Assembly (NCBI RefSeq): GCF_963676685.1
Contig: NC_092347.1
Span: forward strand, 62,620,001-62,684,000
Direction: 5' to 3'
Source: Mytilus edulis
Lineage: Eukaryota
Length of the DNA stretch: 64,000 nt
In this document: in pieces, positions 437 through 54,409 of the stretch
How the letters are laid out: each line of letters starts with the position of its first letter
Numbering within the stretch: the stretch's first letter is position 1
The notes under the pieces: generated by a model
The model's database searches: none
What the model was told of the DNA's origin: nothing
The model's input: only the letters and a program-made list of their open reading frames with translations
Program-made: the position numbers and the translations under genes

Positions 437-1205
437 AAATTAAGAATGAAAATGGGGAATATTTCAAAGAGACAACAACCCGATGAAAGGCAGAAAACAG
501 AAGAAGGCCACCAATGAGTCTTCAACGCAGCGAGAAAATCACACACCCGGAGTCGGGCCTCAGCTGGCTCCGAACTAAAAATGTGAACTAGTTCAGTGAG
601 AATATATGTCCTACTCTAAAACACCTAAATGAACTAAGATTAAAAAAATATATACAATACTTGCAAAGGCCATAGGCTCCTGACTTAGGATACGAATAAA
701 TGTGGCGGGGTTAAACATGTTTTATGAGATCTCAACCCTCCCCTATACCTTTAGCCAATTTAGAACAACGAAGCACACATTTATATGAACAGTTAAACTC
801 AGTTTTAAAGAAGTCCGATTCTGATGTCAGAACAGGCAACAAAAGAAACTAAGCAAAATGATAATGATATATAGATTAACAAAGGACTACTAGCAGTTAC
901 TGACGTTCAAGCTTCAGATCTCAAATAAACTTATTGAAAGATTATGTCTTCAACCATATTAAAACATATGAGAAAAACATAACCTGTAGTAAGCCAACAA
1001 CTGGTTTTAGAACAAATGTGTTTACGTCTGATGAGAAGACCCTATGAGAGAATCAATATTAAGACCAAAATGTGCAATCCTTAATGACATGAAAACAATA
1101 TCGTAACTATATTCCTTCTGTGTAAATCTGTTTAAAGGTTTGGTTAGATTTTGAGGTGATTGTGGATATTTTTGTGATTTGTCAAGAATATTACCATAAA
1201 AGATT
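437..1205 (-). mobile_element. Decayed 5'-truncated Penelope-like element 3' portion (ORF C-terminus plus 3' UTR), same family as 52400-53185
   Basis: Reverse complement aligns along its length with 52400-53185. Residual coding FYGNIL..SPQNLTKPLNRF..SYDIV. Contains a decayed twister fold (660-757) and the four-way junction motif (495-572). Confidence 0.8.
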
Positions 1206-2221: not shown

Positions 2222-2703
2222 TAAACAAAGGCAACAGTACTATACCACTGTTCGAAATTCATAAATCGATTGAAAAAACAAACAAATCCGGGTTAGAAAC
2301 TAAAACTGAGGGAATCACATCGAATATAAGAGGAGAACTACGACACAACAGAAACAAAACATTGAAATGTAACTCACACAGAAACGAACTATGATATAAC
2401 AATAATGGCAATTTTCCTGACTTGGCTTTATAAATATTTGATATGAGCGTCACTGATGAGTCTTATGTAGACGAAACGCGCTTCTGGCGTACTAAACTAT
2501 AATCCTGGTACCTTTGATAACTATTGGTACAGGACATTTTAAAAAAAAAACAAAATGGTGGGTTGAACCTGGTTTTGTGGCATGCCAAACCTCCAGCTTT
2601 TATGGCAATGTTAAAGATAACATTAAAATGACAACATTACATGACAGGACTACAATACAAATAAATATATGAACATATAGGACAGAAAAACACGCGAATA
2701 GTA
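2222..2703 (-). mobile_element. Short non-autonomous retroelement carrying a twister fold (family C), interrupted by a hammerhead mini-element
   Basis: Reverse complement of 40345-40690. Twister landmarks GGAGGT-TTGGCATGCCA-CAAAACCAGGTTCAACCCACC...CCTGTACCAAGTCAGGA, split at 2426-2525. Confidence 0.75.
2445..2490 (+). ncRNA. Minimal type-I hammerhead ribozyme motif (stem III mutated)
   Basis: gcgtca-CTGATGA-gtct tatgt agac-GAAA-cgcgct-TC-tggcgt. Stem I gcgtca/tggcgt, stem II gtct/agac. The family palindromic stem III ACGCGCGT carries a G>T change here. Confidence 0.8.
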
Positions 2704-3597: not shown

Positions 3598-4295
3598 ACA
3601 AGGTCATGTTTTATTTCTTTCTGCCTGTGAGAAAGCATTTTTATTATTTCTTATGAGCTTTGAACTAGTTGCTAGTATCTGTGAGTACTCTCAGATCCGT
3701 ATTTAGTATCTTTTTGCAAATGTTGATGAATAAATACCCTGCCAAGTCAGTTCTGTATTTTTGTTAGTTATTTTTCTGCTTTGTACCAAGACAATGAGTT
3801 AACTCCTTTTCAACTGATGTGTTTAGGTTGTTTTCATATTGTAATGGTACATCACTGTCCTGGGTGAGAGGAGTGAATGGCGGCTTCAAACTATTTTAAC
3901 CTGTCCCAAGTCAGGAACCTGTAACGCAGTGTTTGTCGTTAGTTGCTGTATTTCATATTTGATTTTCGTTCATTGTTTTGAACATAAACCAGACCGTTAT
4001 TTTTCTTTTTTGACTTGTTTTAATTTGTCATTTTAGGGACTTTTATATGTTGTGCTTTGTGTACTATTTTTTATTGTTTGTCTTTTTTTTTATTCAACCA
4101 TGGCGTTGTAAGTTTATTCTCGATTTGTGAGTTTGAATGTCCTTCTTGTATCATTTGCCCCTCTTCCATAACTGACTATGTGGTTTGGCTCATTGTTGAA
4201 GGTTCTACGGTGATCTATAATTGTTAAGTTCTATGTCAATGGTCTCTGTTTGGGAGTTTTCTCATTAGCAATCATACCACATCTTACTATTTTTA
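3598..4295 (+). mobile_element. Decayed SINE-like/PLE-derived element (twister remnant, four-way motif, caatcataccacatctt tail) with a nested Naiad tail, inserted inside a hammerhead copy
   Basis: CCTGTCCCAAGTCAGGA at about 3900. Tail ctcattagcaatcataccacatctt at about 4261-4285. Nested ggcgttgt...cccctctt tail at about 4045-4168. The flanks rejoin into a minus-strand hammerhead. Confidence 0.6.
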
Positions 4296-12329: not shown

Positions 12330-12668
12330 GAATATTGTTTGTCGTTTCTTAGTGATTGGCATTGTAACACAATGTTGACTGCTGTATTTTTGACATTTTT
12401 ACCTATTATGTCTGTTTGTTTTGTTCACGCATCGTTGTCAAAATATTTGAATAATATGTAACTGTCATTCAAGTGAGAGATTTAGCTAGCTATAAAACAG
12501 TTTCAATCCACCATTTTCTACATTAGAAAATGCTTATACCAAGTCAGGAATATGACAGTTGTTTTCGATTTGTTTGACGTGTTTGAGCTTTTGATATTGC
12601 TATTTGATCATGGACTTTCGTTTTGAATTTTCCTCGGAGTTCGGTATTTTTGTGATTTTGTTTTTTTC
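12330..12668 (+). mobile_element. Short non-autonomous retroelement carrying a twister fold (family B); related copies at ~32080-32447 and ~34100-34462
   Basis: P5 aactgtcat/atgacagtt, GTGAGAG, palindrome TAGCTAGCTA, CAATCCACC, P3 cattttct/agaaaatg, TACCAAGTCAGGA. Three homologous copies in the window. Confidence 0.75.
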
Positions 12669-14291: not shown

Positions 14292-14532
14292 AAATAGTTA
14301 TCAAAGATACAAGGCTTATAAATTGATACACCAGGCGTGCGTTTCGTCTACAACAGACTCATCAGTGACCTTTGATCAAAATACTTAAAAGCCAAACAAA
14401 TAAAAAGTTGGAGAGCATTGAGGACTCGAAATTCCAAAACGTTGGGCCAGATACGGATAAGGTAATCTATGCCTGGGATAAGAAAATCCTTAGTATTTCG
14501 AATAATTCATACTTTTGCTAACAGTTTATAAA
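14292..14532 (-). mobile_element. Hammerhead-bearing retrozyme-like element (cleavage triplet mutated to GCC)
   Basis: Minus strand gtca-CTGATGA-gtct gttgt agac-GAAA-cgcacgcc-tggtgt at ~14328-14370, followed by the family tail ...tctttgataactattt. Confidence 0.75.
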
Positions 14533-24138: not shown

Positions 24139-24958
24139 AAGAAAGATAAGAAGTAAGCAATATCCTTTAACTTTACTTTCCGCTATATATATGATGTTCT
24201 CTCACTAAATAATACAAAATTTGGTGACTATGTTGAACGCATCTATCTGACCGAACTAGAGATAAAGGATACAATAGATACAGTTAAGTCGGCCTCATAT
24301 CTTGACTTACATCTAGAAATTGACAATGATGGTCAGTTGAAAACAAAACATTATAACAAAAGAGATGATTTTAGCTTTCCAATTGTGAACTTTCCATTTC
24401 TAAGTAGCAACATTCCAGCAACACCTGCATACAGGTTATATATCTCCCAATTGATACGATATTCCCGTGCTTGTATATCCTATCATGATTTTCTTGATAG
24501 AGGATTGCCGCTCACAAGGAAGCTATTAAACCAAGAGTTCCAAGTGGTGAAGTTGAAATCATCCCTTCGTAAATTTTACGGACGCCATCACGAGTTGGTT
24601 GACCGTTATGGAATAACCGCTTCACAGATGATATCGGATATGTTTCTTATGTCGTAACTACAATACCCTTCTCTAGCATGAATGTGACCTACCGAATTAG
24701 ACTATTTACCGGATTTGTTATAACATGAGCAATAGGACGGATGCCACATGTAGAGCAAGATATGCATACCCTGCCGGAGCACCTTAGATCAACCCCAGTT
24801 TTTTGTGGGGTTCGTGTTGCTTATTCTTTAGTTTTCTATGTTGTGTCATGTGTACTTTTGTTTGTCTGTTTGTCTTTTTCATTTTTAGCTATTACGTTTT
24901 CAGTTTATTTTCGATTTATGAGTTTGACTGTCCCTCTGGTATCTTTCGCCCCTCTTTT
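24139..24958 (+). mobile_element. 5'-truncated Naiad-type Penelope-like element (RT C-terminal half plus 3' UTR)
   Basis: FNFTFRYI(Y)DVLSLNN...YLDLHLEID...KRDDFSFPIVNFPFLSSNIP..AY..YISQLIRYSRAC...KFYGRHHELV, then stop at 24657 with no GIY-YIG. UTR matches 44667-44963. Confidence 0.9.
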
Positions 24959-26555: not shown

Positions 26556-27957
26556 AAAGCCGAATATTTTAAATCCGAGGACGTGATAGGTATAGAACCA
26601 CTAATCCAGGCCCGGTCGGAAAGAACATACAAGAAAGTAGTACATATTTTTAACAAAATAGTTCCTACGCATAGCTGTATCTTTGTCAATAGCGGGTATA
26701 TTCGGTTAATTGTGGTATCAAATGAAAGCCTGGGAACTTGGGATCTCTGTAAAACCCTTCTTGAAAGATTTATTTGAATAATAATGGAGTATTTGAAATT
26801 TTGATAGAAGGGCACATTTGACCTGTTGTTCAGATCAGAAATTCCTGTTTTTGTACTATCAAACTTCGGGGAACCAGTACGCTGTAATATGCAATTACAG
26901 ATATGTTGATTTTGCAGCACAAGCCACGATAAGCTACAGTTTTGACATGAAATAACTGACACTCTATTTGAACTCACGACAAAGTAGCCATTAATGCTTG
27001 AAATTGCAGAATTTAACATAGAAAGTAATGGGGCTATGAATTAGTTGTATTATACCTATAAGAACTGAATCAGTTGCCAAGTAAATAAATAAGGGCATCC
27101 ACTGCAATCACGGGGTACAATCAACAGCATCAAAACAGCAGAGCAACATACCATGTTGTCAATACAAAACAATAAGTTGTGGTATGATTGCCATGAGACA
27201 ACTATCCTATCTTATTTTCCTCCTTTTTTATTTTTTTCTTCTTTTGTTTGAGTTGAGAATCAACAGAGGAACCTGAATGACTGCACTCTGGCACACAAAG
27301 TATATGTATTATATCGGAGTGTAGAGAGAAGGAGGAAGATGGACACTACCGTGCTCGGAAAATTAGAAACTCTTGATCTCCTAGTAAACTATCGATCCTC
27401 TAAATAAACCTATTCTAAGAGGTCTCCAATTCAACACTGTAATTTGATCTTTGTTTTTATTGATTTTGTTATCAGTAAATGAAAAGCAAACTAAATATTA
27501 TTGTTATATACATATTCACTTCCTTTGATCTATAATCTGTCGATACCTGTATATTGGCATTGCACACGGTCATGTTTACCCCACAACATTCTGTATGAAT
27601 GTGCTGGTCACAAGACAGATGCCTATAGTTCAGTGGTTGTCGTTGGTTCCTGTGTTACATATTTGGTTTTCGTTCATTCATTTTGTACATTAATTAGGCC
27701 GTTAGTTATCTCGTTTGAATTGATGACAGTACGGTGACCTATAGTGGTAATTTCTGTTCCATTTGTTCTCTGTTGAAGAGTTGTCTCCTTGGTAATCATA
27801 CCACATTTTGGTAAGGCAAAGCTACGCAACTAAAAGTGTTGTTTTAACAAAATCGTGTAGGTTTGTTTGTCCTGTTTGTCGCAGTATGTTAATGACCACA
27901 TAATCGCTCATGTATTTGCATGAAGCCAAGATTATCGTATACTTCCGTTGGCATTTT

Positions 27958-31624: not shown

Positions 31625-32807
31625 TTAAACATTTAGAAACGTGTCAATTTATGAGTTTGACTGTCCCTTTGGTATCTTTCGTCCCTCTTTTAAATATAAT
31701 ATTTCAATTCAATATAAATGTTGCTAGTCCATGATTGTACAATGGAATATACATAATACACCATTCCAGTTATTAAAAGAATACATAATTATGTGAAAAA
31801 GAAGAGAAAAAAATAAAATTTCAAAGAATACTTCTTGACTTATCTATCAAGAAACAATAAGGAAATAGAAGTCAAGTTAGAGGGTCTTTTTATCATTATT
31901 CATCCACGGAATGTCATCCGCGGAATGTCGATGTTTTAATAGACCAAAAAAGACTTCTTCATTTAAAAAAAAAATATTAAAAAATTTGAAATTAAAGGGA
32001 AATGGGATTCACATCAACTAAAATTTCCGAAAGTTGTATTTCTATAGAGTGCATAGTCATTTTTTTTTCTTTATTGATATAGTTGTTTGTATTCATAGTT
32101 ATTAAGATTTTAACAAATTGTTGACTGCTATACCCCCTGTTTTTTGGGGTTTTTTTTTTGCCTTTTTACCTACAATGTGTTTGTGTCACACATTGTTGTC
32201 AATTTAATGGAATTCTATGCTACTTTCATACAAGTGATAGATTAAGCTTTCTATAAAACTAGGTTTATTCCACCATTTTTTACATACGGTAATGTCTGTA
32301 CAATTTTTTCAAAAGTCAGGAATATGACAGCTGTTTTCCATTCGCCTGATGTGTTAGAGCTTTTGATTTTGCAATTTGATAAAGGATTTTCCGGGGTTTT
32401 TTTTTAATTTTTCTTGGAGATCGGTATATTTGATATCTTACTTTTTTCAATATTGACGTATACAAATAATGGCAGAAAATATACCAATCATTTGAGCTTT
32501 TATGACCTCAACACATTTTAAACTCGTTCTTACTAAAGAATTTTAACTCAGAGACGTTAAATGTTTTACAATTTGGAGGTTATGGCAGATGTTTGCCCTC
32601 AGTTCTTAAAGTCTGTTGCGTGTTATATATGACAATAAGAACCATATGATCTACTCATATTTCAAAAAACTGCAATGACAATCAACAGTTATAAAGTTAT
32701 CATTTTTACAAGAGAACTACAACCTAAACCAATTACAAAGCACCAAATATGAGAAAGGCTATCTCTTGTGGTTCTTTTTTAATGGTATAGAACATTTTCG
32801 TGAGTTC

Positions 32808-33481: not shown

Positions 33482-35659
33482 TGTAAACAGTCAGGAAGTA
33501 CTTCCTTACAAAAGATTCAAAATCGATCACAAAGTATTTATTAATCCTGGAATAATTTTTTGATTAACGATATGAACTATATTGGTCAAACTACACCACA
33601 TTTCGTGTGTCAATCATGTCAGGTTATCTAGGCCACGACCGTTTTTTGCCTTCATTCGGAAGTCTATCTTCTCGGAGGCGCCCGTTCTTGGTTATTGTAA
33701 ATGTCCGTTGTTCTTTACATTATTTTTCAAAATACCTGCTATTCATTTTTACTTATGTAAAATGTAAAAAATGAATATTTTGTTGAAAATTAAAGGGAAT
33801 GCAGCTCAAACATTTAACACATTAACAATATCAACCAACGATCAAAGACAAAACGTTCTTACGTGTAAATTTTAGAAAAGAAGAGATAAAATTACTGCAT
33901 TATAATGCATTCAATACAACACAATTTTAAGGAAGTTGTAATAATGTGATATCCATTTGACGTGACTCTATACTAAACATCCCGTCAATGTGTTATTCTT
34001 CTATGAAACTTTTTGTTATTGTGCTATCATGATACACATTTTTGCATTTTTGTCTTTCATTTTTGCTATTGTGCTTTGTCAATATACCTTTTTGTGCTTA
34101 TTTGTTTGTTTGTTTTATGGTGATTAAGATTCAATATAACATACTGTTGACTGCTGTATCCCTATTTTCGACATTTTTATCTGATATTTTTGTTCGTTTT
34201 GTTCACATATCGTTGTCAATATAATAGAATTGAATGCGACTGTCATACAAACGGGAGGATTAGCTAGCTATAAACCCAGACTCGATCTACTGTTTTCTAC
34301 AAACGATTTTCCCCAAACGAGGATGCCTGTACAAAGTCAGAAATATGACAAGTTTAATCCATTCGTTTTGTGTGTTTGAGCTTTTGATTTTGCCATTTGA
34401 TTAGGGACTTTCCGTTTTGACTTTTCAACGGAATTCAGTATTTTTGGTGATTTTACTTTTTAAATAATTGCTAAATCATTTTTTTACAATGTTAAGGGTA
34501 TGTATATGTTCGAATCTAAGTTCAGTTGTAGAATAGTGTTTGTCTGTTGTGGTATAAGTATTAGCCAATTTAAGATCTATAAAGTCGTTTACATTTAATT
34601 TTAAAAATGCGTAGGCATTATTTATACATTTACAGCATGACGTCAATCATGAAAAAAATTAAGACTTCCGTGTTTAAGTACTAACACGTGGCGGAACAAA
34701 ATTAAGACTTCCGTGTTTAAGTACTAACACGTGGCGGAACAAAATTAAGACTTCCGTGTTTAAGTACTAACACGTGGCGGAACAAAATTAAGACTTCCGT
34801 GTTTAAGTACTAACACGTGGCGGAACAAAATTAAGACTTCCGTGTTTTAAAAGTACTAACACGTGGCGGAACAAAACAACGTTTGTTGAACTTTCAACGA
34901 CGAAACATAATCTCTCTTTTTCTGAAACATTATACGTGTAAACAGTTAAGAATTACATTTATTTAACAGTATCGCTTGGTCTATTGTACTGACTATTGCC
35001 ACTTTATTTTCTCTTAAAATCAGTACTACCAAACTCACTCAATATGTACAAAGCGTAAGGTTTTCCTTCTAGAAAAAAAGATTATTTGAAAAACAAATAT
35101 GACAGACGTGAACCAACGTTATAAGTATGTTTTCTCGGAGGCCCTTAAATGAATATTTTAAGAAAATTCTATTCTAAATACTTAGCTTTCAAACAGGAAG
35201 ACTCATGTGGTATCTAACAACCTGTTCATCAGGACATATTCTCCTTCAGTTGACGTGTAAACAGTCAGGAAGTACTTCCTTACAAAAGATTCAAAATCGA
35301 TCACAAAGTATTTATTAATCCTGGAATAATTTTTTGATTAACGATATGAACTATATTGGTCAAACTACACCACATTTCGTGTGTCAATCATGTCAGGTTA
35401 TCTAGGCCACGACCGTTTTTTGCCTTCATTCGGAAGTCTATCTTCTCGGAGGCGCCCGTTCTTGGTTATTGTAAATGTCCGTTGTTCTTTACATTATTTT
35501 TCAAAATACCTGCTATTCATTTTTACTTATGTAAAATGTAAAAAATGAATATTTTGTTGAAAATTAAAGGGAATGCAGCTCAAACATTTAACACATTAAC
35601 AATATCAACCAACGATCAAAGACAAAACGTTCTTACGTGTAAATTTAAGAAAAGAAGAG
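33482..35659. repeat. 404-bp near-identical direct repeat (33482-33885 and 35256-35659) within an older duplication
   Basis: Identical ORFs at 33582 and 35356 (offset 1774). Diverged homology between ~33290-33500 and ~34550-34960. Confidence 0.9.
34655..34876. repeat. 43-bp tandem repeat x5 with internal dyad symmetry
   Basis: AAAATTAAGACTTCCGTGTTTAAGTACTAACACGTGGCGGAAC; AAGACTTCCG at 34661, 34704, 34747, 34790 and 34833. Confidence 0.95.
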
Positions 35660-37984
35660 CACTCCTAGTCAAACAGTCATAGATCGAAATGTACGTGTAC
35701 AGGGTGTAGACACTTAGATAAGTCTTTAACAGATTCTTCGTAAGTGAATATTGTAACTTTATTGTATCACAAATGCTCAGTAAGTGAAGACATCCACTGT
35801 AGTGTAATGCAGGTATTATTCTAGTGTTTACAAAATGCCCTGTATTTTTTTTATTATTATTTTTGGCTAGGAGTGCTCTTTTCGTATAATAGGATCACAG
35901 TGTGTTGATAAATAAGTGTTGTGTATAAAGAAGCTCTATACGTGTAGGCTAATCGTGTAATGTATGTGTAAACAGTTAGTGAAATGTATGTGTCTTACTG
36001 TCTAAAAGACACTTAAAATTATAGATCACATTACTTGCAACTTATCTTTTATATATGTGTCTTGCGACCAAAAATGTTACAGTGTGTATTTAAACTAAAC
36101 TAAGGAAGATTAAAAAAAATTCAAGGTTCTACGAAACCGAACGTGATTTTTATAATACCCTTTTTTACGATATCATGAAGTGACACAACCTCATGTTTTA
36201 TTGATGATTACATTATACAAATGTTATAGTCGATGCTAATTCCGCTCAGTTTAGGACATCAGTAACCTTTGCCTGGTCGACTATGCGTCTATATCCACTC
36301 TTTGTTCCCCTCTTTCTCGGGATCATCATAATTTTTCGTAAATTGTCATCAATTTTATTTAACGGAACCATATTGATCATTGTGTAACGGCTTTTCAATG
36401 CATCCATAACACATTCTGTATCCAGGCTTCCGATCAAGTCTAGTGTCCCTTCCAAGTCAGCATCTCATAACCTGTTCATTATTTAAACCTCAAACTAGTA
36501 AAACGATGGTGCATATTTCAGCCAGGAACTTGGCTCCTTGATTTTTACAGTGCCCATGCTGAGTACATAACATTTTTGATTTTGTTATGCTGATTATTTC
36601 TTATCTATTCATTGTAAATAAACCAATATGGATTACGAGTAAGACAAACGCATGTAACGAAATGATGACGTAGGTCATAAACAATTTGTATATTTTGTTC
36701 TCACATATTCCGTAAGTTATGGCTGATGAAATGGCACCCTGCTGTATTTTCCTGTAGAGAAAACATTACTTGAGTTTGTTATTGTTCACAGTTTCTTTAA
36801 AGGCCATCTTTTGCTCAGTATAATAACCTTTATCCTTAGAATATGTGTTTTTGTATGAGTCATTGAACGAATTACTGCGATGCGGTTCATAGCTTCTCGA
36901 AATGAAACAGCAATATATTGGGTCATCCGACATAGGAAATAAAATAAAAATATATGTTCTGAACTCTAGACAAGTAAGATTTAAACATTGAGACATTAGG
37001 ACACTTCTTTATTTAAAAAGCGTATGACGACCTATAAGCATATGATCTTTCCAAAACGTTCATATGATCGCAATTAAAAGGAGGAGCGTTTGAGATCTGA
37101 AAACACCAGTTTATCCGCGCCTCATTTTCATGTGACTTTCCAAATTCAGGAACCTCATTATTCATATCTTAATTGTGTTTTGTTTTTTTATGGAAAACAG
37201 TAGTTCATGTCAAATCTTTGGTTGGTCAAAAAGCCACGGAAGATAACAAGGTGACATTAAAAAAGAAGGTTGAAAACGAAAATGAAAAACGAAAATTGCG
37301 CAAGAAGAAGCACACAAATAACCAGGTAGTGATAACTCTTTTTTCCGACACGAAGAGGAGCTCAATTGGTTCCAATATGACTGCAAACTTTTAAAGATAC
37401 ATCCTGCAAACATGACTTATGTTGCCAATCAAATATCCATATAATATTAAAAAAAAAATTTAAAAGAAGATGTGGTATGATTGCCAATGAGACAACTTTC
37501 CACAAGAGACCATATTATGACTCCTAATTATTACTTTTGACAGGGTATCATGCATCAGTAATTTTGTCACCAATCTGTCAAGGTTCTACACAACCTATCG
37601 TGGATTTCAGTTCAACTACAATTGACACGAAAACTAACGATGAATGATAGCTACATAGCCATACTAGATGCAAACGGCAATTTGGAAAAGACAACAACAA
37701 TCCGGCTTGATTGCATACAAAATTATATCACCAATTGATTTTTAACTTTCTTATCTTTTCATTTTACTCCAATTTTATCAATAATGTATAATTCTTTAAT
37801 CTTCTAGTCTTAAACATTGTCATAATTTTATTTGAACGAGGCTATATTGATCCATGTTTTAGAGTCTTAAAATACGCACATAACAAATGATGTATCGAGA
37901 CCACTTCAAATCAAGTCATGTCCCTTTGGACTTTTTAAATAGTTCAAGTAATAACATCTTCTAACAGGCATCTTATAACAGCTC

Positions 37985-39620
37985 GAACCAGACGAATCAG
38001 AACTGGACACTTTGTCTGAATGGATCAAAGCTATTCGATCGTGCATTCAGAAGCGCATTCAAACGTTACGATGTACTATGAGCACAAGAGTTACTAACCC
38101 TTTCAAGAATCCGGATGTTGTGGATGCTTTATCCTCTTTGCATGACAAATATGTAGTGTTCCAGCAGATAAAGCCTCTAATAATATTGTCTTCATATGTA
38201 AAAACCATTATTTGCAATGTCTCATAACAGAGCTTGGAATAAATAGAACAAAGGGTAATCCTACATATTCCTTAACATCATTTACCAAAGACAAAATTTT
38301 ACAAAATCACAAATCTGTCCTTTTTTCTTTTGGTATCAACATCAAAGAAAAAGAAGAAAATTTACCATCATTATACTGGATACCAAAACTACACAAACTC
38401 CATATAAAGAACGATACATAGCTGGATCGTCAAAATGTTCGACTTAACACCTTTCTAAAATACTGACTACTATTATTTCTACAGTTAAAGATAGGCTTCA
38501 AAAATATTGTGATGAGATATATTCTACTAGTGGTGTTAAGCAGATGTTGATTCTCAAAAATTCGAAAGATCTACTGCTTAATCTTCGATCAAAATCTTTG
38601 CAATTTTGCAGCAACATAAAAACTTTAGATTTTTCTTAACTTTAAACTACTATTCCCCATGTTCAGTAAACAAAGCTATTTCTATAAAAATGGGAATCGT
38701 AGATACTAATTTCTTGTTTTTGGTTACAATAGTTCATATTTTGTGAAGAACCACACTGAATCTACCAGAAAGCATACTGAAGATGATATTATCAAAATGC
38801 GGGACTTTTTGATCGACAATATATTTGTTGAGTTTGGAGAATTCATATTTCAACAGACAATCGGTATTCCAAAGAGTACTAATTGTGCACCCCTACTAGC
38901 CGATTTGTTTCTGTTCTCGTATGAAGCAGAATTCATTCAAACCCTTCTAAAAGACTAACAGAAAAAGCACCATGCGAAATTCTTAAATTTCACTTTCCGA
39001 TATATTGATAATGTCCTATCATTGAATAACTCATATTTCAGCCAGTACTTGCATCTCATAAATCCCAGTGAACTTGAAATTAAGGATACTACTGATACTA
39101 AAAGGACTTCTTCAAACCTTGATCTTTTCCTCAATATTGACACAGATGGACGACTTCACACGAAAATCTATGATAAACGGGACGATTTCAACTTCCCAAT
39201 TATCAATTTCTTATTTCTCAGCAGTAAAATACCCTCTGCCCCTTCGTATGGTGTTTACATATCTCAATTGATACGTTATTCTCGTGCATGTTCACACTAT
39301 ACGGACTTAATATACAGGAGTGTGCTTCTAACGCAGAAAATGCTCCAACAAAGTTATGAGGAGGACAGATTAAAAATGACACTCCGTAAATTTTACGGAC
39401 ACCATCACGAATTGGTTGATCCATACGATGTATCTTTATCCAAACTAACTATGGACATTTTTACCACGTGTTAGATTGTGGTTTGTCATTACGTCGTCTG
39501 ATCTTTTTATTACCGAACGTGACTTATTCCCGAATGTGACCGTTTTGCTGAGTGTGAATTCGTATTACTTTAAGACGTGGCACGGTACTTTTCCATCCCA
39601 AATTAATTTGTTGGGTTTTC
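37985..39620 (+). mobile_element. Decayed Naiad-type Penelope-like element, near-complete RT region, 5'-truncated
   Basis: LSEWIK..., DKYVV.PADKASNNIVFICK, LPSLYWIPKLHK.PYKERYIAGS.KCST, ILKNSKDLL, DNIFVEFG.FIFQQTIGIP..TNCAPLLADLFL, FRYIDNVLS, YDKRDDFNFPI, then stop at 39474. Frameshifts and stops throughout. Confidence 0.92.
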
Positions 39621-40109: not shown

Positions 40110-40690
40110 TAGTCATTTTATGAAATTTTCTGTTTGCAAAACTATGTAATATTCTTGATAATAATGATGTTTTTGTCCAAGGCGGATAACCCTGGCCTCA
40201 CAACTTTTTGGAACTTTTGGTCCTTGGCGATCTTCAACTTTGTAGTTGTTTTGGCTTTCAAACTTTTTCATCTGAACACAGTTTTGTGTGGACGTAGCGA
40301 GCGTTTGGCGTATCAAAATATTTTTAACCTGTTACCTTTTGATGGCTATTATTCGATTGTTTCTCTGTCCTATATTTTCTCCCATTTATTTATTGTAGCC
40401 CTGTTCATGTAATGTTGTCATTTCAATGTTATAATTAACACTGCCATTAAAGCGGGAGGTTTGGCATGCCACAAAACCAGTTCAACCAACCATTTATTTT
40501 AGGAAAATGGCAAATGTTACATTATAGTTCGTTTTTGTGTATTTTACATTTCGGTGTTGTGTCTTTGTTGTGTGGTAGTTCTCTTATATTTGATACGTTT
40601 CCCTCAGTTTTAGTTTGTAACCCGGATTTGTTTTTTCTCTATCGATTAATTAATCTTGAACAGCAGTATACTACTGTTGCCTTCATTTAT
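40110..40690 (+). mobile_element. Composite short retroelement: decayed hammerhead unit followed directly by the family-C twister element
   Basis: 40110-40348 is homologous to the hammerhead element (gacgtagcgagcgtttggcgta...acctttgatggctatt). 40349-40690 is the reverse complement of 2222-2703, with the twister 5' part at 40442-40513 (P4 deleted). Confidence 0.65.
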
Positions 40691-41274: not shown

Positions 41275-43533
41275 TTAAAAAAGTTCATTTTCTTCTCATT
41301 TTTTTAAATATTTATGCTTGGCATAACTACAATTTATATATGCGTATGTAAACTACGAGTTGGTGCTTAATTTGAATATTGAATCCAAAAAAAGAAATAA
41401 ATACATAACTTTCTAATTTACAATGGTCATGACCAAACACGTATTGTAAAAATACTTATATGGTCTGGAACATCCCCGTAGTGTTTAACAGGTCCTTAAT
41501 GAATATATTATATTTTCTATTTTGTTAACTTATTTATTTATTTGAAATCATACTCTAAACAGTCAAGACAAACACATTAAAACGAAAAGTTGTTATAGAA
41601 AAACATACAAGCGTATCAAAATTAAATAGTTGAATTGTGAAAAAAAAACTTCGTTTAACACTGCAACAATTTCATCCGCTCGTCCCATGTAAGAAACCTC
41701 TTAGTATTTTAGTTGATTAATAATTGATAACAGATCTTGATTCTTTCTTTAAAGTCTCAGAAAGATTTATTTTTTGAATTTTTATATTCAAACCTATCCC
41801 TTGTAGACTTTAAAGTGCCCTTTTTATGACTTTTGGGTTTCTTTTTTCTTTGGTCTTTGGATTGAAGTCTCAACAAAGTGATACCTCATCTTCTTCTCTT
41901 CATATGACACTTTGTGAAGTGTATTATTGATGCTTATAACAGTACGCACCATTTAACATTGTTCTACAACAAAAACAGATTGCCTTCAGAAATATGGTGA
42001 TTAGGTATATACAATCAATGATGTCAATCAAATATTGATTCGTAACAAATTTAATTGAACTCCAACATCTCTAATCACAATCTTTACAATTTTGCAGTTA
42101 CATCAAACCCTTTGACTTTTCTTTGCTTCACACTGCTTTTCTCAACTGCATCTTCTCATTCAACAGAGTTTTTTTCTACAAGATATGAATTCTTAAATTC
42201 CTTTCTGTTATATATAGCAAAATATTTTGATTAATACCAAACTGATTCCAAAAACAAATACATCTAAGAGGGTATCATCAAAATTTTGTGCTTTTTAATG
42301 ACAACATATATGTACTTCAAGATAAGTCATGTTTTTGTTATCCGGCTTTTATTACTTGTTTATCATTCAAAATTTACAATCTCAAAAAACTTTTGTATAT
42401 ATATATGCCAGACAGCTCAGTATTGTGTGTGTTCAGAGTCAATAATATGCATTTTTTATTGATATTGTTTACTTATTTCTATGCAATAACATCATTGGGG
42501 ACAAGGGAGAAACATACATGAATATGAAAATATAATGACATAGACAATTTAAACCTTGTATGTTTTATGTTTGCATCTGGCGCAAATACACAATTTTAAT
42601 CCCAGTATCTATGATGAGTTTATTTACTTATTTCGTTTATATAATAGTTGTGTATAACACAGTAACACTCTTTTGTACGCAACTGATGAAAAAACGTACA
42701 ACTATGTTTATTATTGTGTCTTTTCCCTTCTTTAAAGGTCATTTTCTTTTGATTGTTATAACCTTTATCATTGTTATATAGACAATTAATGTATACGTCC
42801 TTGGTGCCAAACTGTGATTTAATAAAAAGAGATCTCGTGAAAGATATCAGGTATACAATTTTGTACGCAAGACTCTTGTTTCGTCTACCAAACACTAAGC
42901 AGTGACTATCGAACAAAAAAAAGTACAACACGATAAGGTGCAGGATTTCTCGAATAGCATAGAAAATGTTTGGTCATATGGACGATAAATCTGACATTGG
43001 AAACTTTTTCTACTGATCGCCATTATAAAAAGGGAATGGTTGAGATCTGAAAAAAACAACCTTCAAAATCTTCAATCTTGTGGTCTAAGAGATCTTTCTA
43101 TACAAGCATAGACGTTTAATCTGTAAATTGACTGATTGTTTGTTGTTTCAAGTTGTGACATTTTGACTGAGTTTGAATTATGCATGGCGTTAAATGAATG
43201 CATGGAAAAAAAGTTAACATTTCAGTACACTTACTCTCGCTTCTTATAAAGTTTATGAGAGTCAACTTGTTTTTAATATTTTCTATGATTTGGTTTTGCC
43301 TAATAGATGTACGAGATTTGAACGTCGGTTATTAATGTCGCCTCAATTTACAAAAGCTTCACTTTGTCTTTCCAAGGGTTTGCCTGATATCTCTTAATTT
43401 TGATGCCAGTCGAATGTTACATTCTTTTTTTCACAAGACTATATTTTAATGATTACATGGGTTTTTTTTTGCCCTGGTGATACATTATATACCCATAATT
43501 CAAAACAAGTCCTATCCCTTTTGAACGGGCATC

Positions 43534-44963
43534 TTCCATCACTGTATTGGATACCTAAACTGCATAAGTGTCCTTACAAACAACGGTATATTGCTAGGTC
43601 TTCCAAGTGCTCCACAAAATTATTCTAAATTATTAACATCTATTTTATCAGCAAGCAAAGACGGGCTTTAAAAGTATTGTGAAACTGCCTATTCTAGAGG
43701 TGGCGTGAATCAGATGTGGATACTCAAAAATTCCAAAAATCTTTAAGAGTACATACAATCTTACTCTCTTTCATCTTGTTATAGTATTAAAACATTTGAC
43801 TTTTCTACATTTTACACAAGTATTCCACATTCCAAACTAAAAGACAAACTGAAAGAGTTGGCATTGCTTTGTTGCATAAATACAATGGCCAACGTAGATA
43901 CAAGTATCTTGTCTTAGAAGGGATAAATCCTACTTTGTAAAGGATCACTCTGATTCAAACAAAACATTCTCTGAAACTGACATTATCAAGATGCTTGATT
44001 TCTTGATTGACAACAAAGTTGTTACGTTCAGAGGACGTGTTTTTCAACAGACTATCGACATTCCAATGGGAACGAATTGTTCCCCTCTTCTTGCCGACTT
44101 GTTTCTTTATTATTATGAGGCTGACTTCATACAGGAACTTCTTAGAAAGAAAGATAAGAAGTAAGCAATATCCTTTAACTCTACTTTCCGCTATATAGAT
44201 GATGTTCTTTCACTAAATAATTCAAAATTTGGTTACTATGTTAATCGCATCTATCCCATTGAACTAGAGATAAAGGATACAACAGATACAGTTAAGTCAG
44301 TCTCATATCTTTACTTACATCTAGAAATTGACAATGAGGGTCAGTTGAAAACAAAACTTTACGACAAAAGAGATGATTTTTATCTTTCCAATTGTGAACT
44401 TTCCATTTCTACGTAGCAACATTCCAGCAGCACCTGTATACGGTGTATATATCTCCCAGTTGATAAGGTATATCCGTGCTTGCATTTCCTATCATGATGT
44501 TTTTGATGGAGGGTTGTTGCTGACAAGGAAGCTATTAAATCAAGAGTTCCAAATGGTGAAATTGAAATCATCACTTTGTAAATTTTACGAACGCCATCAC
44601 GATTTGGCTGACCGTTATGAAATAACCGTTTCACAAATGATATCGGATATGTTCCTTACGTCGTAACTACAATCCCCTTCCGTTTCATGAATGTGACCTA
44701 CCGAATAAGACTATTTACCGGATTTGTTATCACATAAGCAACACGACGTGTGCCACATGTGGAGCAGGATCTGCTTACCCTTCTGAAGCACCTGAGATAA
44801 CCCCTAATTTTTGGTGGGGTTCGTGTTGTTTATTCTTTAGTTTTCAATGTTGTGTCATATGTACTATTGTTTGTCTGTTTGCTTTTTCATTTTTAGCCAT
44901 GGCGTTGTCAGTTTATTTTCGATTTATGAGTTTGACTGTCCCTCTGGTATCTTTCGTCCCTCA
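43534..44963 (+). mobile_element. 5'-truncated Naiad-type Penelope-like element (RT plus full 3' UTR)
   Basis: LPSLYWIPKLHKCPYKQRYIA.SSKCSTK, NQMWILKNSK, IKTFDFST.YTSIPH, QQTI.IPMGTNC.PLLADLFL, FRYIDDVLSLNN, KLYDKRDDF; stop at 44666. Boundaries defined by the empty site at ~48053-48070. Confidence 0.95.
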
Positions 44964-45707: not shown

Positions 45708-46545
45708 AAGACAATAACAATCAAAAACAAGGAGAAAACAAAGACTAACAAAACCAAAGGACATTTACATAATAGATAAGAAACAACACGAACTCTACTA
45801 AAAACCGGAAGTGAAATCAGGTGCTCCGGAAGGGTAGTCATTTCCTGCACCGTATACGGCACCCGTCGTGTTATTTCTTTGTTATTTCGGTAATGATGGA
45901 AGGTTATTATGACTGAGGAAGAATATCAGATATGATTTCTGACACACTTTTGTCATAATTGCCAATCAGCTCATGATGGAGACCGTAAAATATCTTGAGT
46001 GATGACCTTAATTTGATTGATTCATAGCCCTGTCTTAGGAACTTTTGAGAAAGCAGTATTTCTCGTTCAACAAAATGAACGTACTTTGAGCTAGTTCTAG
46101 AGTAACGTATCACTTGCGACACAAATACTCCATATGCTGGTGCCGCTGGGATGTTGCTACACAGAAATGGAAAGTTGACTATAGGAAAATTAAAATCATT
46201 GCTTCTAAATATGAAGCAGAATTATCTGTGTCGGTAGTATCATTAATTTCAAGTTCACTTGGATATATTAAATGTAAGTGATCTCTGAATCTATTATTAT
46301 TTAAGAGACAGTACATCATCAATATACCGAAAGGTGAAATTAAAAGGCTAATTTCTTTTCTCCTTTCTGTACAAGCCCTTGGATAAATTCTGCTTCATAG
46401 GAATACAAAAACAAATCTGCAAATAGAGGAGCGCAATTGGTACCCATTGGGATTCCAATAGTCTGTTGGAAGACCAAACCTCCAAATTAAACAAATATGT
46501 TGTCAATTAAAAAGTCCAGCATGGCAGTGATATCTTCTTCGGTTT
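45708..46545 (-). mobile_element. Truncated Naiad-type Penelope-like element of a second family
   Basis: Minus strand TEEDITAMLDFLIDNIFV*FGGLVFQQTIGIPMGTNCAPL.ADLFLYSYEAEFIQ...FRYIDDVLS...DFNFPIVNFPFLCSNIPAAPAYGV...ILPQS* (45907), then structured UTR at 45778-45880. Confidence 0.92.
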
Positions 46546-51552: not shown

Positions 51553-52399
51553 TTCTATAGGTAAACAACAAATTATTCGGAGTTTTAGAAATTGTTCCTT
51601 TCAACATTATTTATTTAGAATGGTAATAAATTGTACACTTTTTTCTTTTGTTTTATATATGCAAAATTCATGTAAGAGTATTTAATTTTGGTGAACTGCT
51701 GTAGCCATTTCTTACTTTGGTGATAGCATAAATAATAGATTATAAAAAAAATAATAATAATTAAGAATCCTGTTCCAATAATAGTATCACTTTTGAAGAG
51801 ACCTTTCAGCAATTGGCAAGAAAATATAAACGTTAAACAGTCGTGCATTTGGTCCAATTATATTGTAAATCGTATAATTAATGCAACTTTCGCCAGTAGA
51901 AATATAATGCGAATATAAATGATTACAAATATATTAAACGTATAACTTTCCTTATTTAACTACATCTAGCTAATTAAGAAACTGTGAAATTGAATCGTCG
52001 AAAAGTGGGATTAAAACGGCTAATTGCAAACTCAAGTATGCGCAAAAATAAGATGGTTTGTAGTATCATAGGATCATGGTGTCGTTGTTTCACTTATCAA
52101 AAAACCCATCTGGTCAAAATTAATTAATCTCATATATAGAAAATGGTTGTATGATAAGAGCCTCTATTGTGCCTGGTCGCTGACTTTGCAAAAAGTAAAC
52201 GTATTCAAGCATTTCAAAATTGTAATTTTATTTATAAGTGAACAAGTTAATTTAATTTCGACACATTGTACAAAAGGTACTTTGTAATATCACTATGACG
52301 TCTTTAGCATATAGACATTTATACATATGTTTTCAAATTGCCATTACAAGCATTTTATGGAGTGTGTGTCCGAGCGAGAACTGCTCTAGTTCATTACTT

Positions 52400-53185
52400 T
52401 AGGAATATATTACCTCAGAAACTTACAAAACCTTTGAATAGACTTATTAAGAAGGGATATGATTACGATACTGTTGTCAAGTCATTAAAGATTGCATATT
52501 TTGGCGTTAATATTGAGTCACTGATAAGGTCTTTGCATCGGAACTAAACACATTTATTCTAAAAACAGTTGTTGGCATGACACGGGTTATGTTCTTCTCA
52601 TATATGTTATGATGGTATGATACTAAACCCCTAACGGGAAGGATTGTGCCTGATGTTCATATGATGAAATCATAATCTTTCAGTCAGTTTAATTGAAGTC
52701 TGGAGCTGGCATGTCAGTTAACTGCTAGTAGTTTGTTGTTATTTATGTATTATTGTCATTTTGTTTATTTTCTTTGGTTACATCTTCTGACATCAGACTC
52801 GGACTTCTCTTGAACTGAATTTTAATGTGCGTATTGTTATGCGTTTACTTTTCTACATTGGTTAGAGGTATAGGGGGAGGGTTGAGATCTCACAAACATG
52901 TTTAACCCCGCCGCATTTTTGCGCCTGTCCCAAGTCAGGAGCCTCTGGCCTTTGTTAGTCTTGTATTATTTTAATTTTAGTTTCTTGTGTACAATTTGGA
53001 AATTAGTATGGCGTTCATTATCACTGGACTAGTATATATTTGTTTAGGGGCCAGCTGAAGGACGCCTCCGGGTGCGAGAATTTCTCGCTACATTGAAGAC
53101 CTGTTGGTGACCCTCTGCTGTTGTTTTTTATTTGGTCGGGTTGTTGTCTCTTTGACACATTCCCCATTTCCATTCTCAATTTTAT
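52400..53185 (+). mobile_element. Young 5'-truncated Penelope-like element 3' portion: ORF C-terminus (..PQKLTKPLNRLIKKGYDYDTVVKSLKIAYFGVNIESLIRSLHRN*) plus 640-nt 3' UTR with twister and four-way motif
   Basis: ORF end at 52547 conserved in the copy at 437-1205. Near-identical tail at 41120-41274. PLE assignment is inference from the shared 3' terminal motif and the 5'-truncation pattern. Confidence 0.75.
52861..52949 (+). ncRNA. Twister ribozyme, type-P5 permutation, intact core; predicted cleavage U52903^A52904
   Basis: P5 gttagaggt/gcctctggc; P2 GGGG(52873-76)/CCCC(52906-09); G-A-GGG (52877-81); U^AA; P3 gca-tttt-tgc; P4 CCTG-TCCCAAGT-CAGG-A. Matches the twister consensus (compare rice UAACACUGCC..GCCGGUCCCAAGCCCGGA..AGUGGAGGG). 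Confidence 0.85.
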
Positions 53186-54409
53186 TTTGTTTTTTTTTAT
53201 ATATGAGCTCTTACCAAAAATATTTTGACCGCTACTTAAATAAAGTAAAAAACTTTGTGTGGCAAAACAATTTTTGGTATAAAGCTGATAAGTAACAAAA
53301 CATGAAAATGAAATTATTTTGAAAGCTTTTGATATTCATCATAAAAAGTTGAAACCATGATATCAATACGTAAGACAAAGTTCAAAAAAAAAAATAATGA
53401 TATTCAATGGAATAATATATTATGGATATCGTGAAGATTTTATGTGTTAGGTTTATCATATTTAAATAGGTTTCGGATCAAATTATCGCAACATTGATAA
53501 CAATTTTAAAAAATCGAATACATTTTGGGCTGACGCCAACCACGATCTTCATTATATGAAATACACAACTGAGCGTGTATGGTCAGTTTTCCATTTATTT
53601 TTTTAGATATATGGTATAGCTAGCTTTACACTTCTTGGATGCTTTTATAAAAGATAGTCGAGTTGTATCTTAATTTGAAGTCAGAATCTTTCGAAAATAA
53701 TTTGAAACAAAAATAATGCTATCAGCTGTATAGATTATATGTCCTTCCAATTAGGGAACGAAAACATCATAAAGATCACTGAATGAGCAAAAACGCTGTT
53801 CTTTTGCTTTTGGTGTGTTTTCTTGCTGAGCATGGACTGATTTCTTTACACCATGTCCTTTGGTTTTCTATGATATGTACGAATTATTAAATTCATGTTA
53901 TCACAACTGGATCACATTTTAACCGCTACTAGTGGACTGTTACTCCTCGATAGTATCATCATCGCTTAAGGTTTTTTTAACTTGGAGTTGGATTTGTAGC
54001 GTGCTAGATCTCAATGTTACAGTCTGTAGTTATAGCGTACCAATGAAGAACGAAACAGAATATGTGTCCAAAGGGGAACAATCCCTACTCGCATTACCAC
54101 ATTTCCATGTTCTTTCAACTATCATTTGGATAATACTCTATGTTTAGCATACATAGTAAAACGTTAACATCATAATGAAAATGAGAATTGAAAAGGGAAA
54201 GAATTCGACCAAAGAGAAGAAAACAAACAGTCCTAGTTCACCAATTGGTCTTCAACACTGTTAAAAATCAAAATGCACACATGTACGTAGTTTATGTTGA
54301 TGTTATCAGAAATTAAAAGTTTCCATCATGAATCACTTTTTAACCGCTGCTGGCGGACTGATATTCCCCGATTGATCATCATCGCTGAAATCGAGGACCT
54401 GAACCGAAA

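What the first reader, a model, noticed from the sequence alone, without database searches (positions are those of the whole stretch)
52861..52949. Type-P5 twister ribozyme in the 3' UTR of Penelope-like retroelements, in at least three divergent families with compensatory changes
Seen: all twister core elements occur in permuted (P5-open) order: P5'-P2'-GAGGG...U^AA-P2-GCC-P3-GCCUGUCCCAAGUCAGGA-P5. The same fold recurs with different sequence. Family B (12460-12560, ~32220-32335, ~34238-34352) has P5 actgtcat/atgacag. Family C (40442-40513 and 2405-2610 minus) has P5 tgccatt/aatggca. Pseudoknot T1 covaries (GGG:CCC in family A versus GGU:ACC in family C; family B keeps ACC in its best copy but its partner strand is mutated) and T2 varies GC:GU versus AC:GU. 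Decayed copies lie at 660-757, 3855-3930, ~27575-27640 and ~37075-37155. Known: canonical PLEs carry hammerheads, Naiad-type PLEs were described as lacking canonical hammerheads, and twisters are known from other non-LTR elements. Inference: these bivalve PLEs and their non-autonomous partners use a twister to process their RNA. This copy belongs to a young family and may be active.
Basis: partly seen in the sequence, partly recalled or inferred. Interest (0 to 1): 0.9.

Follow-up and report, generated by a model that had tools for sequence, protein, structure and literature searches.

The report
Twister ribozyme motif in Naiad retroelements
An 89-base stretch in the tail of a very abundant Penelope-like (Naiad-type) retroelement has every core feature of the twister self-cleaving ribozyme, a link I found in no paper, but public RNA reads and the genome's own copies show no sign that it cuts efficiently in the animal.

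Summary
The motif at 52860-52950 is real. On a 99-base search, Rfam's Twister-P5 model aligns end to end (23.1 bits, below the 37.6 cut-off). All conserved core letters match. Both pseudoknots, P2, P3, P4 and a 10-bp P5 can form. P1 is replaced by two perfect palindromes. The exact core occurs 8,630 times in this 1.37-Gb genome.

The window copy (52408-53185) is a 5'-truncated 3' fragment. Longer copies carry an N-terminal GIY-YIG, a CxC motif, DKA, an RT, in-frame TGA codons and a SECIS. That makes it a selenoprotein-type Naiad PLE.

Between diverged subfamilies the twister core is an island of conservation. One pseudoknot pair covaries completely (G-C versus U-A). Families B and C, however, do not keep P2 in register and get no Rfam twister hit.

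Four RNA-seq runs show no pile of molecule ends at U52903/A52904. There is also no excess of genomic copies starting there.

Verdict: a twister-class motif newly linked to PLEs. Cleavage is plausible, perhaps conditional, but unproven. First readers of this scan noted the same reading on other DNA of this genome (s1-835458, s1-834624). No paper in the searchable library links twisters with PLEs.

The parts
52408..53185 (+). 5'-truncated copy (778 bp) of the family A Naiad-type PLE: end of the ORF, 3' UTR and 3' terminus (ends ...CTCAATTTTA, no poly-A)
   Evidence: Alignment and BLAST against 30 genomic copies: shared 3' end at 53185, variable 5' ends, and longer copies continue upstream of 52408
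52413..52547 (+). Remnant of the ORF's C-terminal 44 codons with TAA stop at 52545-52547
   Evidence: Translation; 97.7% identical to the C-terminus of the long copy L031
52599..52663 (+). SECIS-like element, 52 nt after the stop codon
   Evidence: Rfam SECIS_1 32.3 bits (cut-off 35), full model, E 2.2e-4 on 801 bases
52860..52869 (+). P5, 5' strand (pairs with 52941-52950)
   Evidence: MFE fold; P5 differs in sequence but pairs in families A1, A2, B and C
52873..52876 (+). P2, 3' strand GGGG (pairs with CCCC 52906-52909)
   Evidence: Aligned to P2 of Rfam Twister-P5
52877..52881 (+). GAGGG: predicted general base G52877, then A, then the GGG strand of pseudoknot T1/PK2 (pairs with C52929-C52931)
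   Evidence: Matches the GAGgG consensus; role of the first G as general base from PMC11662667; pair 52881-52929 covaries G-C / U-A
52882..52902 (+). 21-nt substitute for the P1 hairpin: palindrome 52883-52892 and palindrome 52894-52903, with no P1 pairing
   Evidence: Palindromy checked; Rfam skips its 20-position P1 here; other subfamilies have different palindromes at the same two places
52903..52905 (+). U^AA: predicted scissile bond between U52903 and A52904 (general acid A52904, then A52905)
   Evidence: Aligned to UAA of Twister-P5; cleavage not observed
52906..52912 (+). P2 5' strand CCCC, then GCC (G52910-C52911 form T2/PK1 with U52935-G52934)
   Evidence: pair counts (AU 25, GU 18; CG 43)
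52913..52922 (+). P3 hairpin (optional twister stem)
   Evidence: aligned as canonical P3 of twister-P1 in subfamily A2; three pairs with changes on both sides
52924..52939 (+). P4 stem with loop L4 (UCCCAAGU)
   Evidence: 95% of cells paired across 45 copies
52941..52950 (+). P5, 3' strand
12460..12560 (+). Family B copy of the homologous module (degenerate twister core)
40442..40513 (+). Family C copy lacking P4, about 1.1 kb downstream of a Naiad RT remnant at 38362-39360
2405..2610 (-). Family C copy whose L4 loop is split by an insertion of about 100 nt that carries a hammerhead
656..776 (-). Decayed family A copy

Best explanation
The stretch is a twister-class self-cleaving ribozyme motif. 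It is of type P5, with the optional P3 stem. It sits about 280 nt before the 3' end of a very abundant Naiad-type Penelope-like retroelement that codes for a selenoprotein.

In the sense RNA it should fold as follows (inferred):
- P5 (52860-69 / 52941-50) closes the domain.
- P2 (52873-76 / 52906-09), P3 and P4 form.
- The P4 loop docks through two pseudoknots: 52879-81 with 52929-31, and 52910-11 with 52934-35.
- G52877 (general base) and A52904 (general acid) cut between U52903 and A52904. This leaves a 2',3'-cyclic phosphate and a 5'-OH.

The usual P1 hairpin is replaced by two palindromes. As a monomer, the scissile bond and the GGG pseudoknot strand can instead be locked in an 8-bp hairpin (52879-86 / 52901-08). 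I therefore expect cleavage to be slow or conditional. One possible trigger is two copies pairing through the palindromes, in tandem transcripts or in particles, as described for the dimeric hammerheads of canonical PLEs.

Shown here: the motif, its copy number, its host element, the conservation island and one covarying tertiary pair. Inferred: the fold, the cleavage, its conditionality and its role in processing element RNA.
For: - Rfam Twister-P5 aligns over 58/58 positions with every upper-case consensus letter matched. The 3' half of subfamily A2 aligns to twister-P1, including a canonical P3.
- P1 is dispensable for twister cleavage, and insertions next to it are tolerated (PMC11662667).
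- The exact core is kept in 8,630 copies.
- Between subfamilies A1 and A2 the 3' UTRs are otherwise unalignable. Only the twister core (52874-52944) and a coding stretch give hits.
- Across 45 copies of families A, B and C, 80.5% of cells pair, against at most 50.6% when partners are slid. The T1 pair switches G-C to U-A with 100% pairing. T2 is A-U or G-U. P3 and P5 covary.
- A1, A2 and the general-base G are kept in all three families.
- The host element is a Naiad PLE. Naiads were reported to lack canonical hammerheads.
- Tandem arrangement: a partial copy plus a full copy, with the two motifs 3,968 bp apart.
Against: - The score is below Rfam's gathering cut-off. The motif is not found in whole-window or whole-genome Rfam scans.
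- There is no P1.
- In four RNA-seq runs (depth 200-650, core letters intact in most reads) no place at 52903/52904 reaches the 'many molecules begin or end' criterion of a fifth of the depth. Depth does not dip there.
- The 27-mer just 3' of the site is not more frequent than the 27-mer just 5' of it (8,135 against 9,143). Seven incidental truncated copies start at scattered places, none at 52904. Cleaved 3' fragments were therefore not common templates.
- Families B and C lose the P2 register.
- The MFE fold hides the cleavage site.
Confidence: 0.55

Rival explanations
1. A twister-derived fold that no longer works as a ribozyme. The compact double-pseudoknot domain is kept in the 3' UTR as a structural signal. 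It could be a binding platform for the element's telomerase-related RT, or serve for packaging or dimerisation of template RNA. Cleavage plays no part.
For: - No ends at the predicted site in RNA-seq.
- No excess of copies starting at the site.
- All copies carry sequence on both sides of the site, so templates were uncleaved.
- Families B and C keep P4, its loop, both pseudoknots and P5, but let P2 drift. They get no Rfam hit.
- Short ORF-less units of about 620 bp in family C keep the module.
- Family-specific palindromes favour RNA-RNA pairing.
Against: - The catalytic A1, A2 and general-base G are invariant across families, although a purely structural role would not obviously require them.
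- Family A has no core defect by the rules of the large-scale twister assay.
- Internal hammerheads of canonical PLEs pose the same 'uncleaved template' paradox and are still active ribozymes (PMC6765202).
Confidence: 0.33
2. No function. The motif is a neutral relic or a chance look-alike, and is carried along only because the family is young.
For: - The Rfam score is below threshold.
- Most copies are young and near-identical, so identity among them proves little.
- Searches for further compensated T1 variants found only scattered decayed copies: 58 and 8.
Against: - The core is the only alignable part of the 3' UTR between diverged subfamilies.
- There is a compensated tertiary pair, and P3 and P5 covary.
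- About 17 fixed letters in the right order plus four helices are far beyond chance (my estimate).
Confidence: 0.07

Closest known systems
Type-P5 twister ribozyme (Rfam RF02684, clan CL00120; Roth et al. 2014 as cited in PMC11662667)
   Same: Same order of elements: P2', GAGGG, P1 position, UAA, P2, GC(C), optional P3, P4 with a GUCCCAAG-type loop, closed by P5. Same two pseudoknots. The 21-nt segment stands exactly where the model has its 20-position P1.
   Different: No P1 helix; two palindromes stand in its place. T2 has a G-U wobble. The score is 23.1 bits against a cut-off of 37.6. Cleavage has not been shown.
[quoted passage not shown] 2021, PMC8501958)
   Same: A twister-class motif carried by a retrotransposon and present in very many copies.
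   Different: In Perere-3 the ribozyme is at the 5' end, target-site duplications abut the cleavage site, and cleavage was shown in vitro and in reporters. Here the motif is internal, in the 3' UTR about 280 nt from the end. The host is a PLE, not an RTE-type element. No copies end or begin at the site.
Hammerhead ribozymes in the pseudo-LTRs of canonical Penelope-like elements, many active only as dimers (Cervera & de la Pena 2014; Lunse et al. 2017; reviewed in PMC6765202)
   Same: Same kind of host, same position near the 3' end inside a region repeated in tandem copies, and palindromic sequence that could pair two copies.
   Different: A different ribozyme class. Naiad-type PLEs were reported to lack canonical hammerheads (PMC8557442). 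Dimer dependence is only a hypothesis here.
Selenoprotein-coding Naiad PLEs of clams and spiders (Craig et al. 2021, PMC8557442)
   Same: N-terminal GIY-YIG, CxC, DKA, an RT, in-frame UGA at conserved cysteine positions and a SECIS just after the stop codon.
   Different: That paper reports no ribozyme in these elements and does not mention twister (0 occurrences).

Membership tests
Twister ribozyme (Rfam CL00120 / RF02684) | Covariance-model score at or above the curated gathering score | tested here: not met
   23.1 bits against 37.6. No hit at gathering score or in whole-window or whole-genome scans. Families B and C: no hit at E<=10.
Twister ribozyme (Rfam CL00120 / RF02684) | Conserved internal-loop letters: N^AA on the 5' side, and G (general base) A on the 3' side | tested here: met
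   U52903 A52904 A52905 and G52877 A52878 align to the consensus. Kept in families B and C.
Twister ribozyme (Rfam CL00120 / RF02684) | P4 hairpin with a GUCCCAAG-type loop | tested here: met
   52924-52939. P4 is paired in 95% of cells across 45 copies.
Twister ribozyme (Rfam CL00120 / RF02684) | Two pseudoknots between the P4 loop and (i) the GGG of GAGGG, (ii) the GC after P2 | tested here: met
   Complementary in all families. One pair switches G-C to U-A (27 UA, 16 GC, 1 UG). T2 is AU 25 / GU 18 and CG 43. This is only one independent covariation event.
Twister ribozyme (Rfam CL00120 / RF02684) | P2 helix flanking the internal loop | tested here: inconclusive
   Four G-C pairs in family A. 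In families B and C the register is not kept, and 62.6% of cells pair overall.
Twister ribozyme (Rfam CL00120 / RF02684) | P1 helix next to the cleavage site | tested here: not met
   The 21 nt between GAGGG and UAA cannot pair as P1. P1 is reported as dispensable for cleavage (PMC11662667).
Twister ribozyme (Rfam CL00120 / RF02684) | Site-specific self-cleavage | tested here: inconclusive
   No accumulation of read ends at 52903/52904 above a fifth of the depth in four RNA-seq runs. These were not end-specific libraries, and no in-vitro assay is possible with these tools.
Naiad-type (N-terminal EN+) Penelope-like element | GIY-YIG endonuclease N-terminal to the RT, joined by a CxC motif; DKA instead of DKG | tested here: met
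   Read directly from the natural copy L031: YVGETGR..EH, then CNC, then PADKAANN, then RT YLDD. This holds for the family, not for the truncated window copy.
Naiad-type (N-terminal EN+) Penelope-like element | RT recognised by profile or homology searches | tested here: inconclusive
   Pfam RVT_1 gives only E 0.11. The nearest Atlas clusters are invertebrate proteins with RVT_1 / HTH_animal. Related RT remnants in the window are 36-67% identical per aligned segment.
Naiad-type (N-terminal EN+) Penelope-like element | Partial tandem (pseudo-LTR) arrangement and 5' truncation | tested here: met
   A 570-bp 3' fragment is directly followed by a full copy, with motifs 3,968 bp apart. 5' ends are variable.
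Naiad-type (N-terminal EN+) Penelope-like element | Selenoprotein subtype: in-frame UGA plus a SECIS in the 3' UTR | tested here: met
   The stops inside the conserved stretches of L031 are TGA (three in the endonuclease region, one after DKA). One TAG in frame 0 coincides with a frame change. The terminal stop is TAA. SECIS_1 scores 32.3 bits, slightly under the cut-off of 35.

The most novel reading that the evidence does not exclude
Naiad-type PLEs carry a dimerisation-gated twister. P1 has been replaced by two family-specific palindromes. A single RNA is held in an off-state hairpin that buries the scissile bond. The ribozyme fires only when two copies pair, either in tandem pseudo-LTR transcripts or as two RNAs in one particle. 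This would mean that PLEs recruited two unrelated ribozyme classes (hammerhead and twister) to the same dimer-dependent role.
Probability: 0.2. Interest if true: 0.85.

Novelty: new variant of a known kind. Interest (0 to 1): 0.62.

Why it matters
Canonical Penelope-like elements always carry hammerhead ribozymes. The deep-branching Naiad clade, which dominates bivalve genomes, was reported to lack them, and this was taken to mean that PLEs can do without a ribozyme.

A twister at the equivalent place in Naiad 3' UTRs would point the other way: PLE biology needs some self-cleaving or twister-like RNA. It would add a third retroelement class to the hosts of twisters. It would also supply thousands of natural sequence variants of a P1-less twister for study.

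The negative RNA-seq and copy-end results are informative too. If the fold is kept without cleavage, this would be a case of a ribozyme scaffold reused as a structural signal. In either case the question becomes testable with a simple transcription assay.

Tried and rejected
- Rfam at gathering score on the whole window: nothing.
- Rfam E<=10 on the whole window: no twister.
- Rfam on 401 bases: only a partial twister-P1 hit.
- Rfam RF02684 on the whole genome: no match, with 79 of 31,236 candidates scored. Uninformative.
- BLAST-type DNA search of the genome with the motif: empty, because very common words are skipped.
Later searches gave counts but no loci. I did not try another route.
- Pfam on the ORF pieces: no significant family.
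- tRNA head for a SINE: none.
- Search for further compensated T1 states (GGA/UCC, GGC/GCC): only 58 and 8 scattered decayed copies, so no second covariation event.
- Cleavage in public RNA reads: no support.
- A step in copy number at the site: none.
- Strand ratio across the site: it fluctuates as much elsewhere in the element, so I read nothing into the 40-50% rise after about 52915.
- A cis or trans P1 between the two flanks of the 21-nt segment: the strands are not complementary.
- Supplementary tables of the large twister survey, to look for bivalve candidates: not held.

Full report
**Observation**

In order they are:
- a 10-nt strand (52860-69) complementary to 52941-50;
- AUA, then GGGG (52873-76), then G52877 A52878 GGG (52879-81);
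- 21 nt (52882-52902);
- U52903 A52904 A52905, then CCCC (52906-09), then GCC;
- a small hairpin (52913-22), then G;
- a 4-bp hairpin with loop UCCCAAGU (52924-39), then A52940.

The minimum-free-energy fold gives P5, P3 and P4. It also gives a long hairpin that pairs 52879-86 with 52901-08 (z = -2.4 to -2.6).

**Comparison with Rfam**

- At gathering score the window has no RNA family at all.
- The whole-window scan at E<=10 lists no twister.
- On 401 bases, only P3 and P4 match twister-P1 (13.3 bits).
- On the 99-base stretch itself, where filters are laxer, Twister-P5 (RF02684) aligns over all 58 positions at 52873-52939. The score is 23.1 bits, the cut-off is 37.6, and E is 0.0025 for that small search.
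- In that alignment every upper-case consensus letter is matched: GAGgG, UAA, GC and GUCcCAAG.
- The 21-nt segment falls exactly where the model has its 20-position P1, which is skipped. P3 is treated as an insertion.
- In subfamily A2 (locus L014) the 3' half aligns to twister-P1 with P3 as a canonical stem (19.5 bits).
- A whole-genome run of RF02684 scored only 79 of 31,236 candidates and found nothing. That says little.

The formal family test (score at or above cut-off) is therefore failed. The reasons are visible: no P1 helix, an extra P3, and a U in place of C in the loop.

By the published dissection of about 1,900 natural twisters, P1 is dispensable and insertions beside it are tolerated. 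The indispensable letters are A1, A2 and, less strictly, the general-base G in the internal loop, together with the pseudoknots (PMC11662667). Family A has all of these.

**What it belongs to**

The exact core pattern occurs 8,630 times in this 1.37-Gb genome, and the reversed control occurs 0 times. Alignment of 30 copies shows a sharp common 3' end at 53185 (...CTCAATTTTA, no poly-A) and variable 5' ends.

The window copy spans 52408-53185. Other copies continue upstream of its 5' end. There is no ORF of 80 aa or more directly upstream in the window. The copy does begin with the last 44 codons of an ORF, with its TAA at 52545-47. A near-threshold SECIS follows at 52599-52663 (32.3 bits against 35).

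In the long natural copy L031, read as it stands, the ORF region shows:
- a zinc-finger/GIY-YIG block (YVGETGR...EH);
- a CxC motif (CNC);
- PADKAANN;
- the RT motifs, including YLDD.

In L031 the stops that interrupt the conserved stretches are TGA: three in the endonuclease region and one after DKA. The copy also changes frame twice, and one of these changes coincides with a TAG. The terminal stop is TAA.

These are the diagnostic features of Naiad-type, N-terminal-EN PLEs and of their selenoprotein subtype as described by Craig et al. 2021 (PMC8557442). Profile support is weak: Pfam RVT_1 gives E 0.11, and the nearest Atlas clusters are invertebrate RVT_1/HTH_animal proteins.

In L031 a 570-bp 3' fragment is directly followed by a full copy, so two motifs lie 3,968 bp apart. 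This is the partial-tandem layout typical of PLEs.

Family C's module lies about 1.1 kb downstream of a second Naiad RT that is about 46% identical, both in the window (RT 38362-39360, motif 40442) and in loci L036 and L051. Family C also exists as ORF-less units of about 620 bp.

**Is the fold under selection?**

Copies of one young family prove little, so I compared families.

- Between subfamilies A1 and A2 the 3' UTRs are otherwise unalignable. Apart from a neighbouring A1 tail, only the twister core (52874-52944, E 5e-13) and a short coding stretch give hits. Between A1 and C only the P4 region does.
- In a MAFFT alignment of 45 copies of families A, B and C, the twister structure including both pseudoknots pairs 80.5% of cells. 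With partners slid it pairs at most 50.6%. None of 500 shuffles reaches the observed pairing or covariation score.
- The T1 pair 52881-52929 is G-C in family A and U-A in families B and C (16, 27, plus one U-G; 100% paired).
- The T2 pair is G-U in A and A-U in B and C.
- P4 is invariant. P3 has three pairs with changes on both sides. P5 has a different sequence in each family but pairs.

Against this:
- P2 is kept in register only in family A (62.6% of cells overall). Family C subfamilies read GUGC, GCGG or GGGG before the general-base G, opposite a constant CCCACC.
- Rfam finds no twister in family B or C copies.
- A search for further compensated T1 states found only 58 and 8 scattered decayed copies.

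The tertiary covariation therefore rests on one event.

**Does it cut in the animal?**

Four raw-read RNA-seq runs of the same species label were laid on 52250-53350 at 95% likeness or better.
- The element is covered at depth 200-650 in both directions.
- The only frequent variants inside the motif are at 52862 (P5 wobble to Watson-Crick), 52893 (the spacer between the two palindromes) and 52913 (P3). Most reads therefore carry an intact core.
- No row for 52903/52904 appears among places where many molecules begin or end (threshold a fifth of the depth). Depth does not dip there.
- One direction rises 40-50% after about 52915 in three runs. The rise starts too late for 52904, and the strand ratio fluctuates as much elsewhere in the element.

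As a genomic test I compared copy counts on either side of the site. The 27-mer just 5' of the site occurs 9,143 times. The 27-mer just 3' of it occurs 8,135 times. Seven incidental truncated copies begin at 52951, 52970, 52995, 53033, 53092, 53111 and 53115. Tail-only copies are very common: one 34-mer variant of the 3' end occurs 6,891 times. Run-off cDNAs starting at A52904 are nevertheless not enriched.

Efficient constitutive cleavage in vivo is therefore unlikely. Slow or conditional cleavage is not excluded. These libraries are not end-specific, and rapidly degraded products would be missed.

**The P1 substitute**

Positions 52883-92 and 52894-52903 are perfect 10-nt palindromes. Other subfamilies have different palindromes at the same two places:
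- first place: GGGAUCCC, GGCGCC, AGCUAGCU, AGCGCU, GGCAUGCC;
- second place: AACAUGUU, AAACUAGUUU, AACC-A-GGUU.

Palindromy that includes the central letters is not needed for a hairpin. It is what an intermolecular duplex requires. RNAcofold favours homodimers by 8-17 kcal/mol in all families, though any palindrome would give this.

The monomer hairpin buries the scissile bond. Canonical PLE hammerheads provide a precedent for dimer dependence (PMC6765202). Together these suggest a gated ribozyme. This is inference only.

**Literature**

No paper in the searchable library links twisters to Penelope-like elements or Naiads. Craig et al. do not mention twister. Twister variants are known at the 5' end of Perere-3 elements in Schistosoma (PMC8501958) and were announced for RTE elements (PMC7761336). 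Bivalves are listed among taxa with predicted twisters, without genomic context (PMC11662667).

**Verdict**

Family A carries a bona fide twister-class core inside a selenoprotein Naiad PLE. Families B and C carry a diverged version of the same module. Activity is unproven, and bulk data argue against efficient cleavage.

I rate it a new variant of a known kind: twister, in a new host class, without P1.

First readers noted the same reading on other DNA of this genome (s1-835458, s1-834624). Those notes are not independent evidence.

All statements on the ORF come from natural copies read as they stand.

Noticed in passing
window 52599-52663 (+); L031 3403-6260: SECIS-like element 52 nt after the ORF's TAA stop. 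In L031 the stops inside the conserved ORF stretches are TGA, at positions where PLE endonucleases have cysteines and after the DKA motif; one TAG coincides with a frame change. This genome therefore holds a very abundant selenoprotein-type Naiad family.
   Followed up: partly
window 2447-2490 (+), inside 2405-2610: Near-threshold type I hammerhead (30.1 bits, cut-off 34). It lies on the strand opposite to a family C copy, within an insertion of about 100 nt that splits that copy's P4 loop and is flanked by a CCAA duplication.
   Followed up: partly
window 52883-52892 and 52894-52903; same places in loci L001-L063: Two perfect palindromes replace twister P1. Each family or subfamily has its own palindromic sequence at both places, which suggests RNA-RNA pairing of two copies.
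   Followed up: partly
window 38362-39360, 43533-44552, 24166-24543 (+), 46024-46534 (-): Remnants of further Naiad-type RT genes, 36-67% identical per aligned segment to family A's RT. No GTCCCAAGT-like loop sequence (one mismatch allowed) turned up on the + strand in the ~2 kb downstream of the one at 43533-44552, so not every Naiad family here seems to carry the module.
   Followed up: partly
window 53152-53185 and genome-wide: Tail-only copies are extremely common. One exact 34-mer of the 3' end (plus a following T) occurs 6,891 times, so most insertions are truncated downstream of the twister motif.
   Followed up: partly
window 53051: In run X22, 112 of about 530 molecules begin at 53051 in one direction. 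This was seen in one run only and is unexplained.
   Followed up: no
window 14342-14380 (-): Weak type III hammerhead match (24.9 bits, cut-off 48.5, E 0.62).
   Followed up: no
window 52879-52886 with 52901-52908: An 8-bp helix predicted by the MFE fold pairs the GGG pseudoknot strand and the following letters with UUUAACCC. This would bury the predicted scissile bond. Families B and C can form an analogous GGUUU/AAACC helix.
   Followed up: partly
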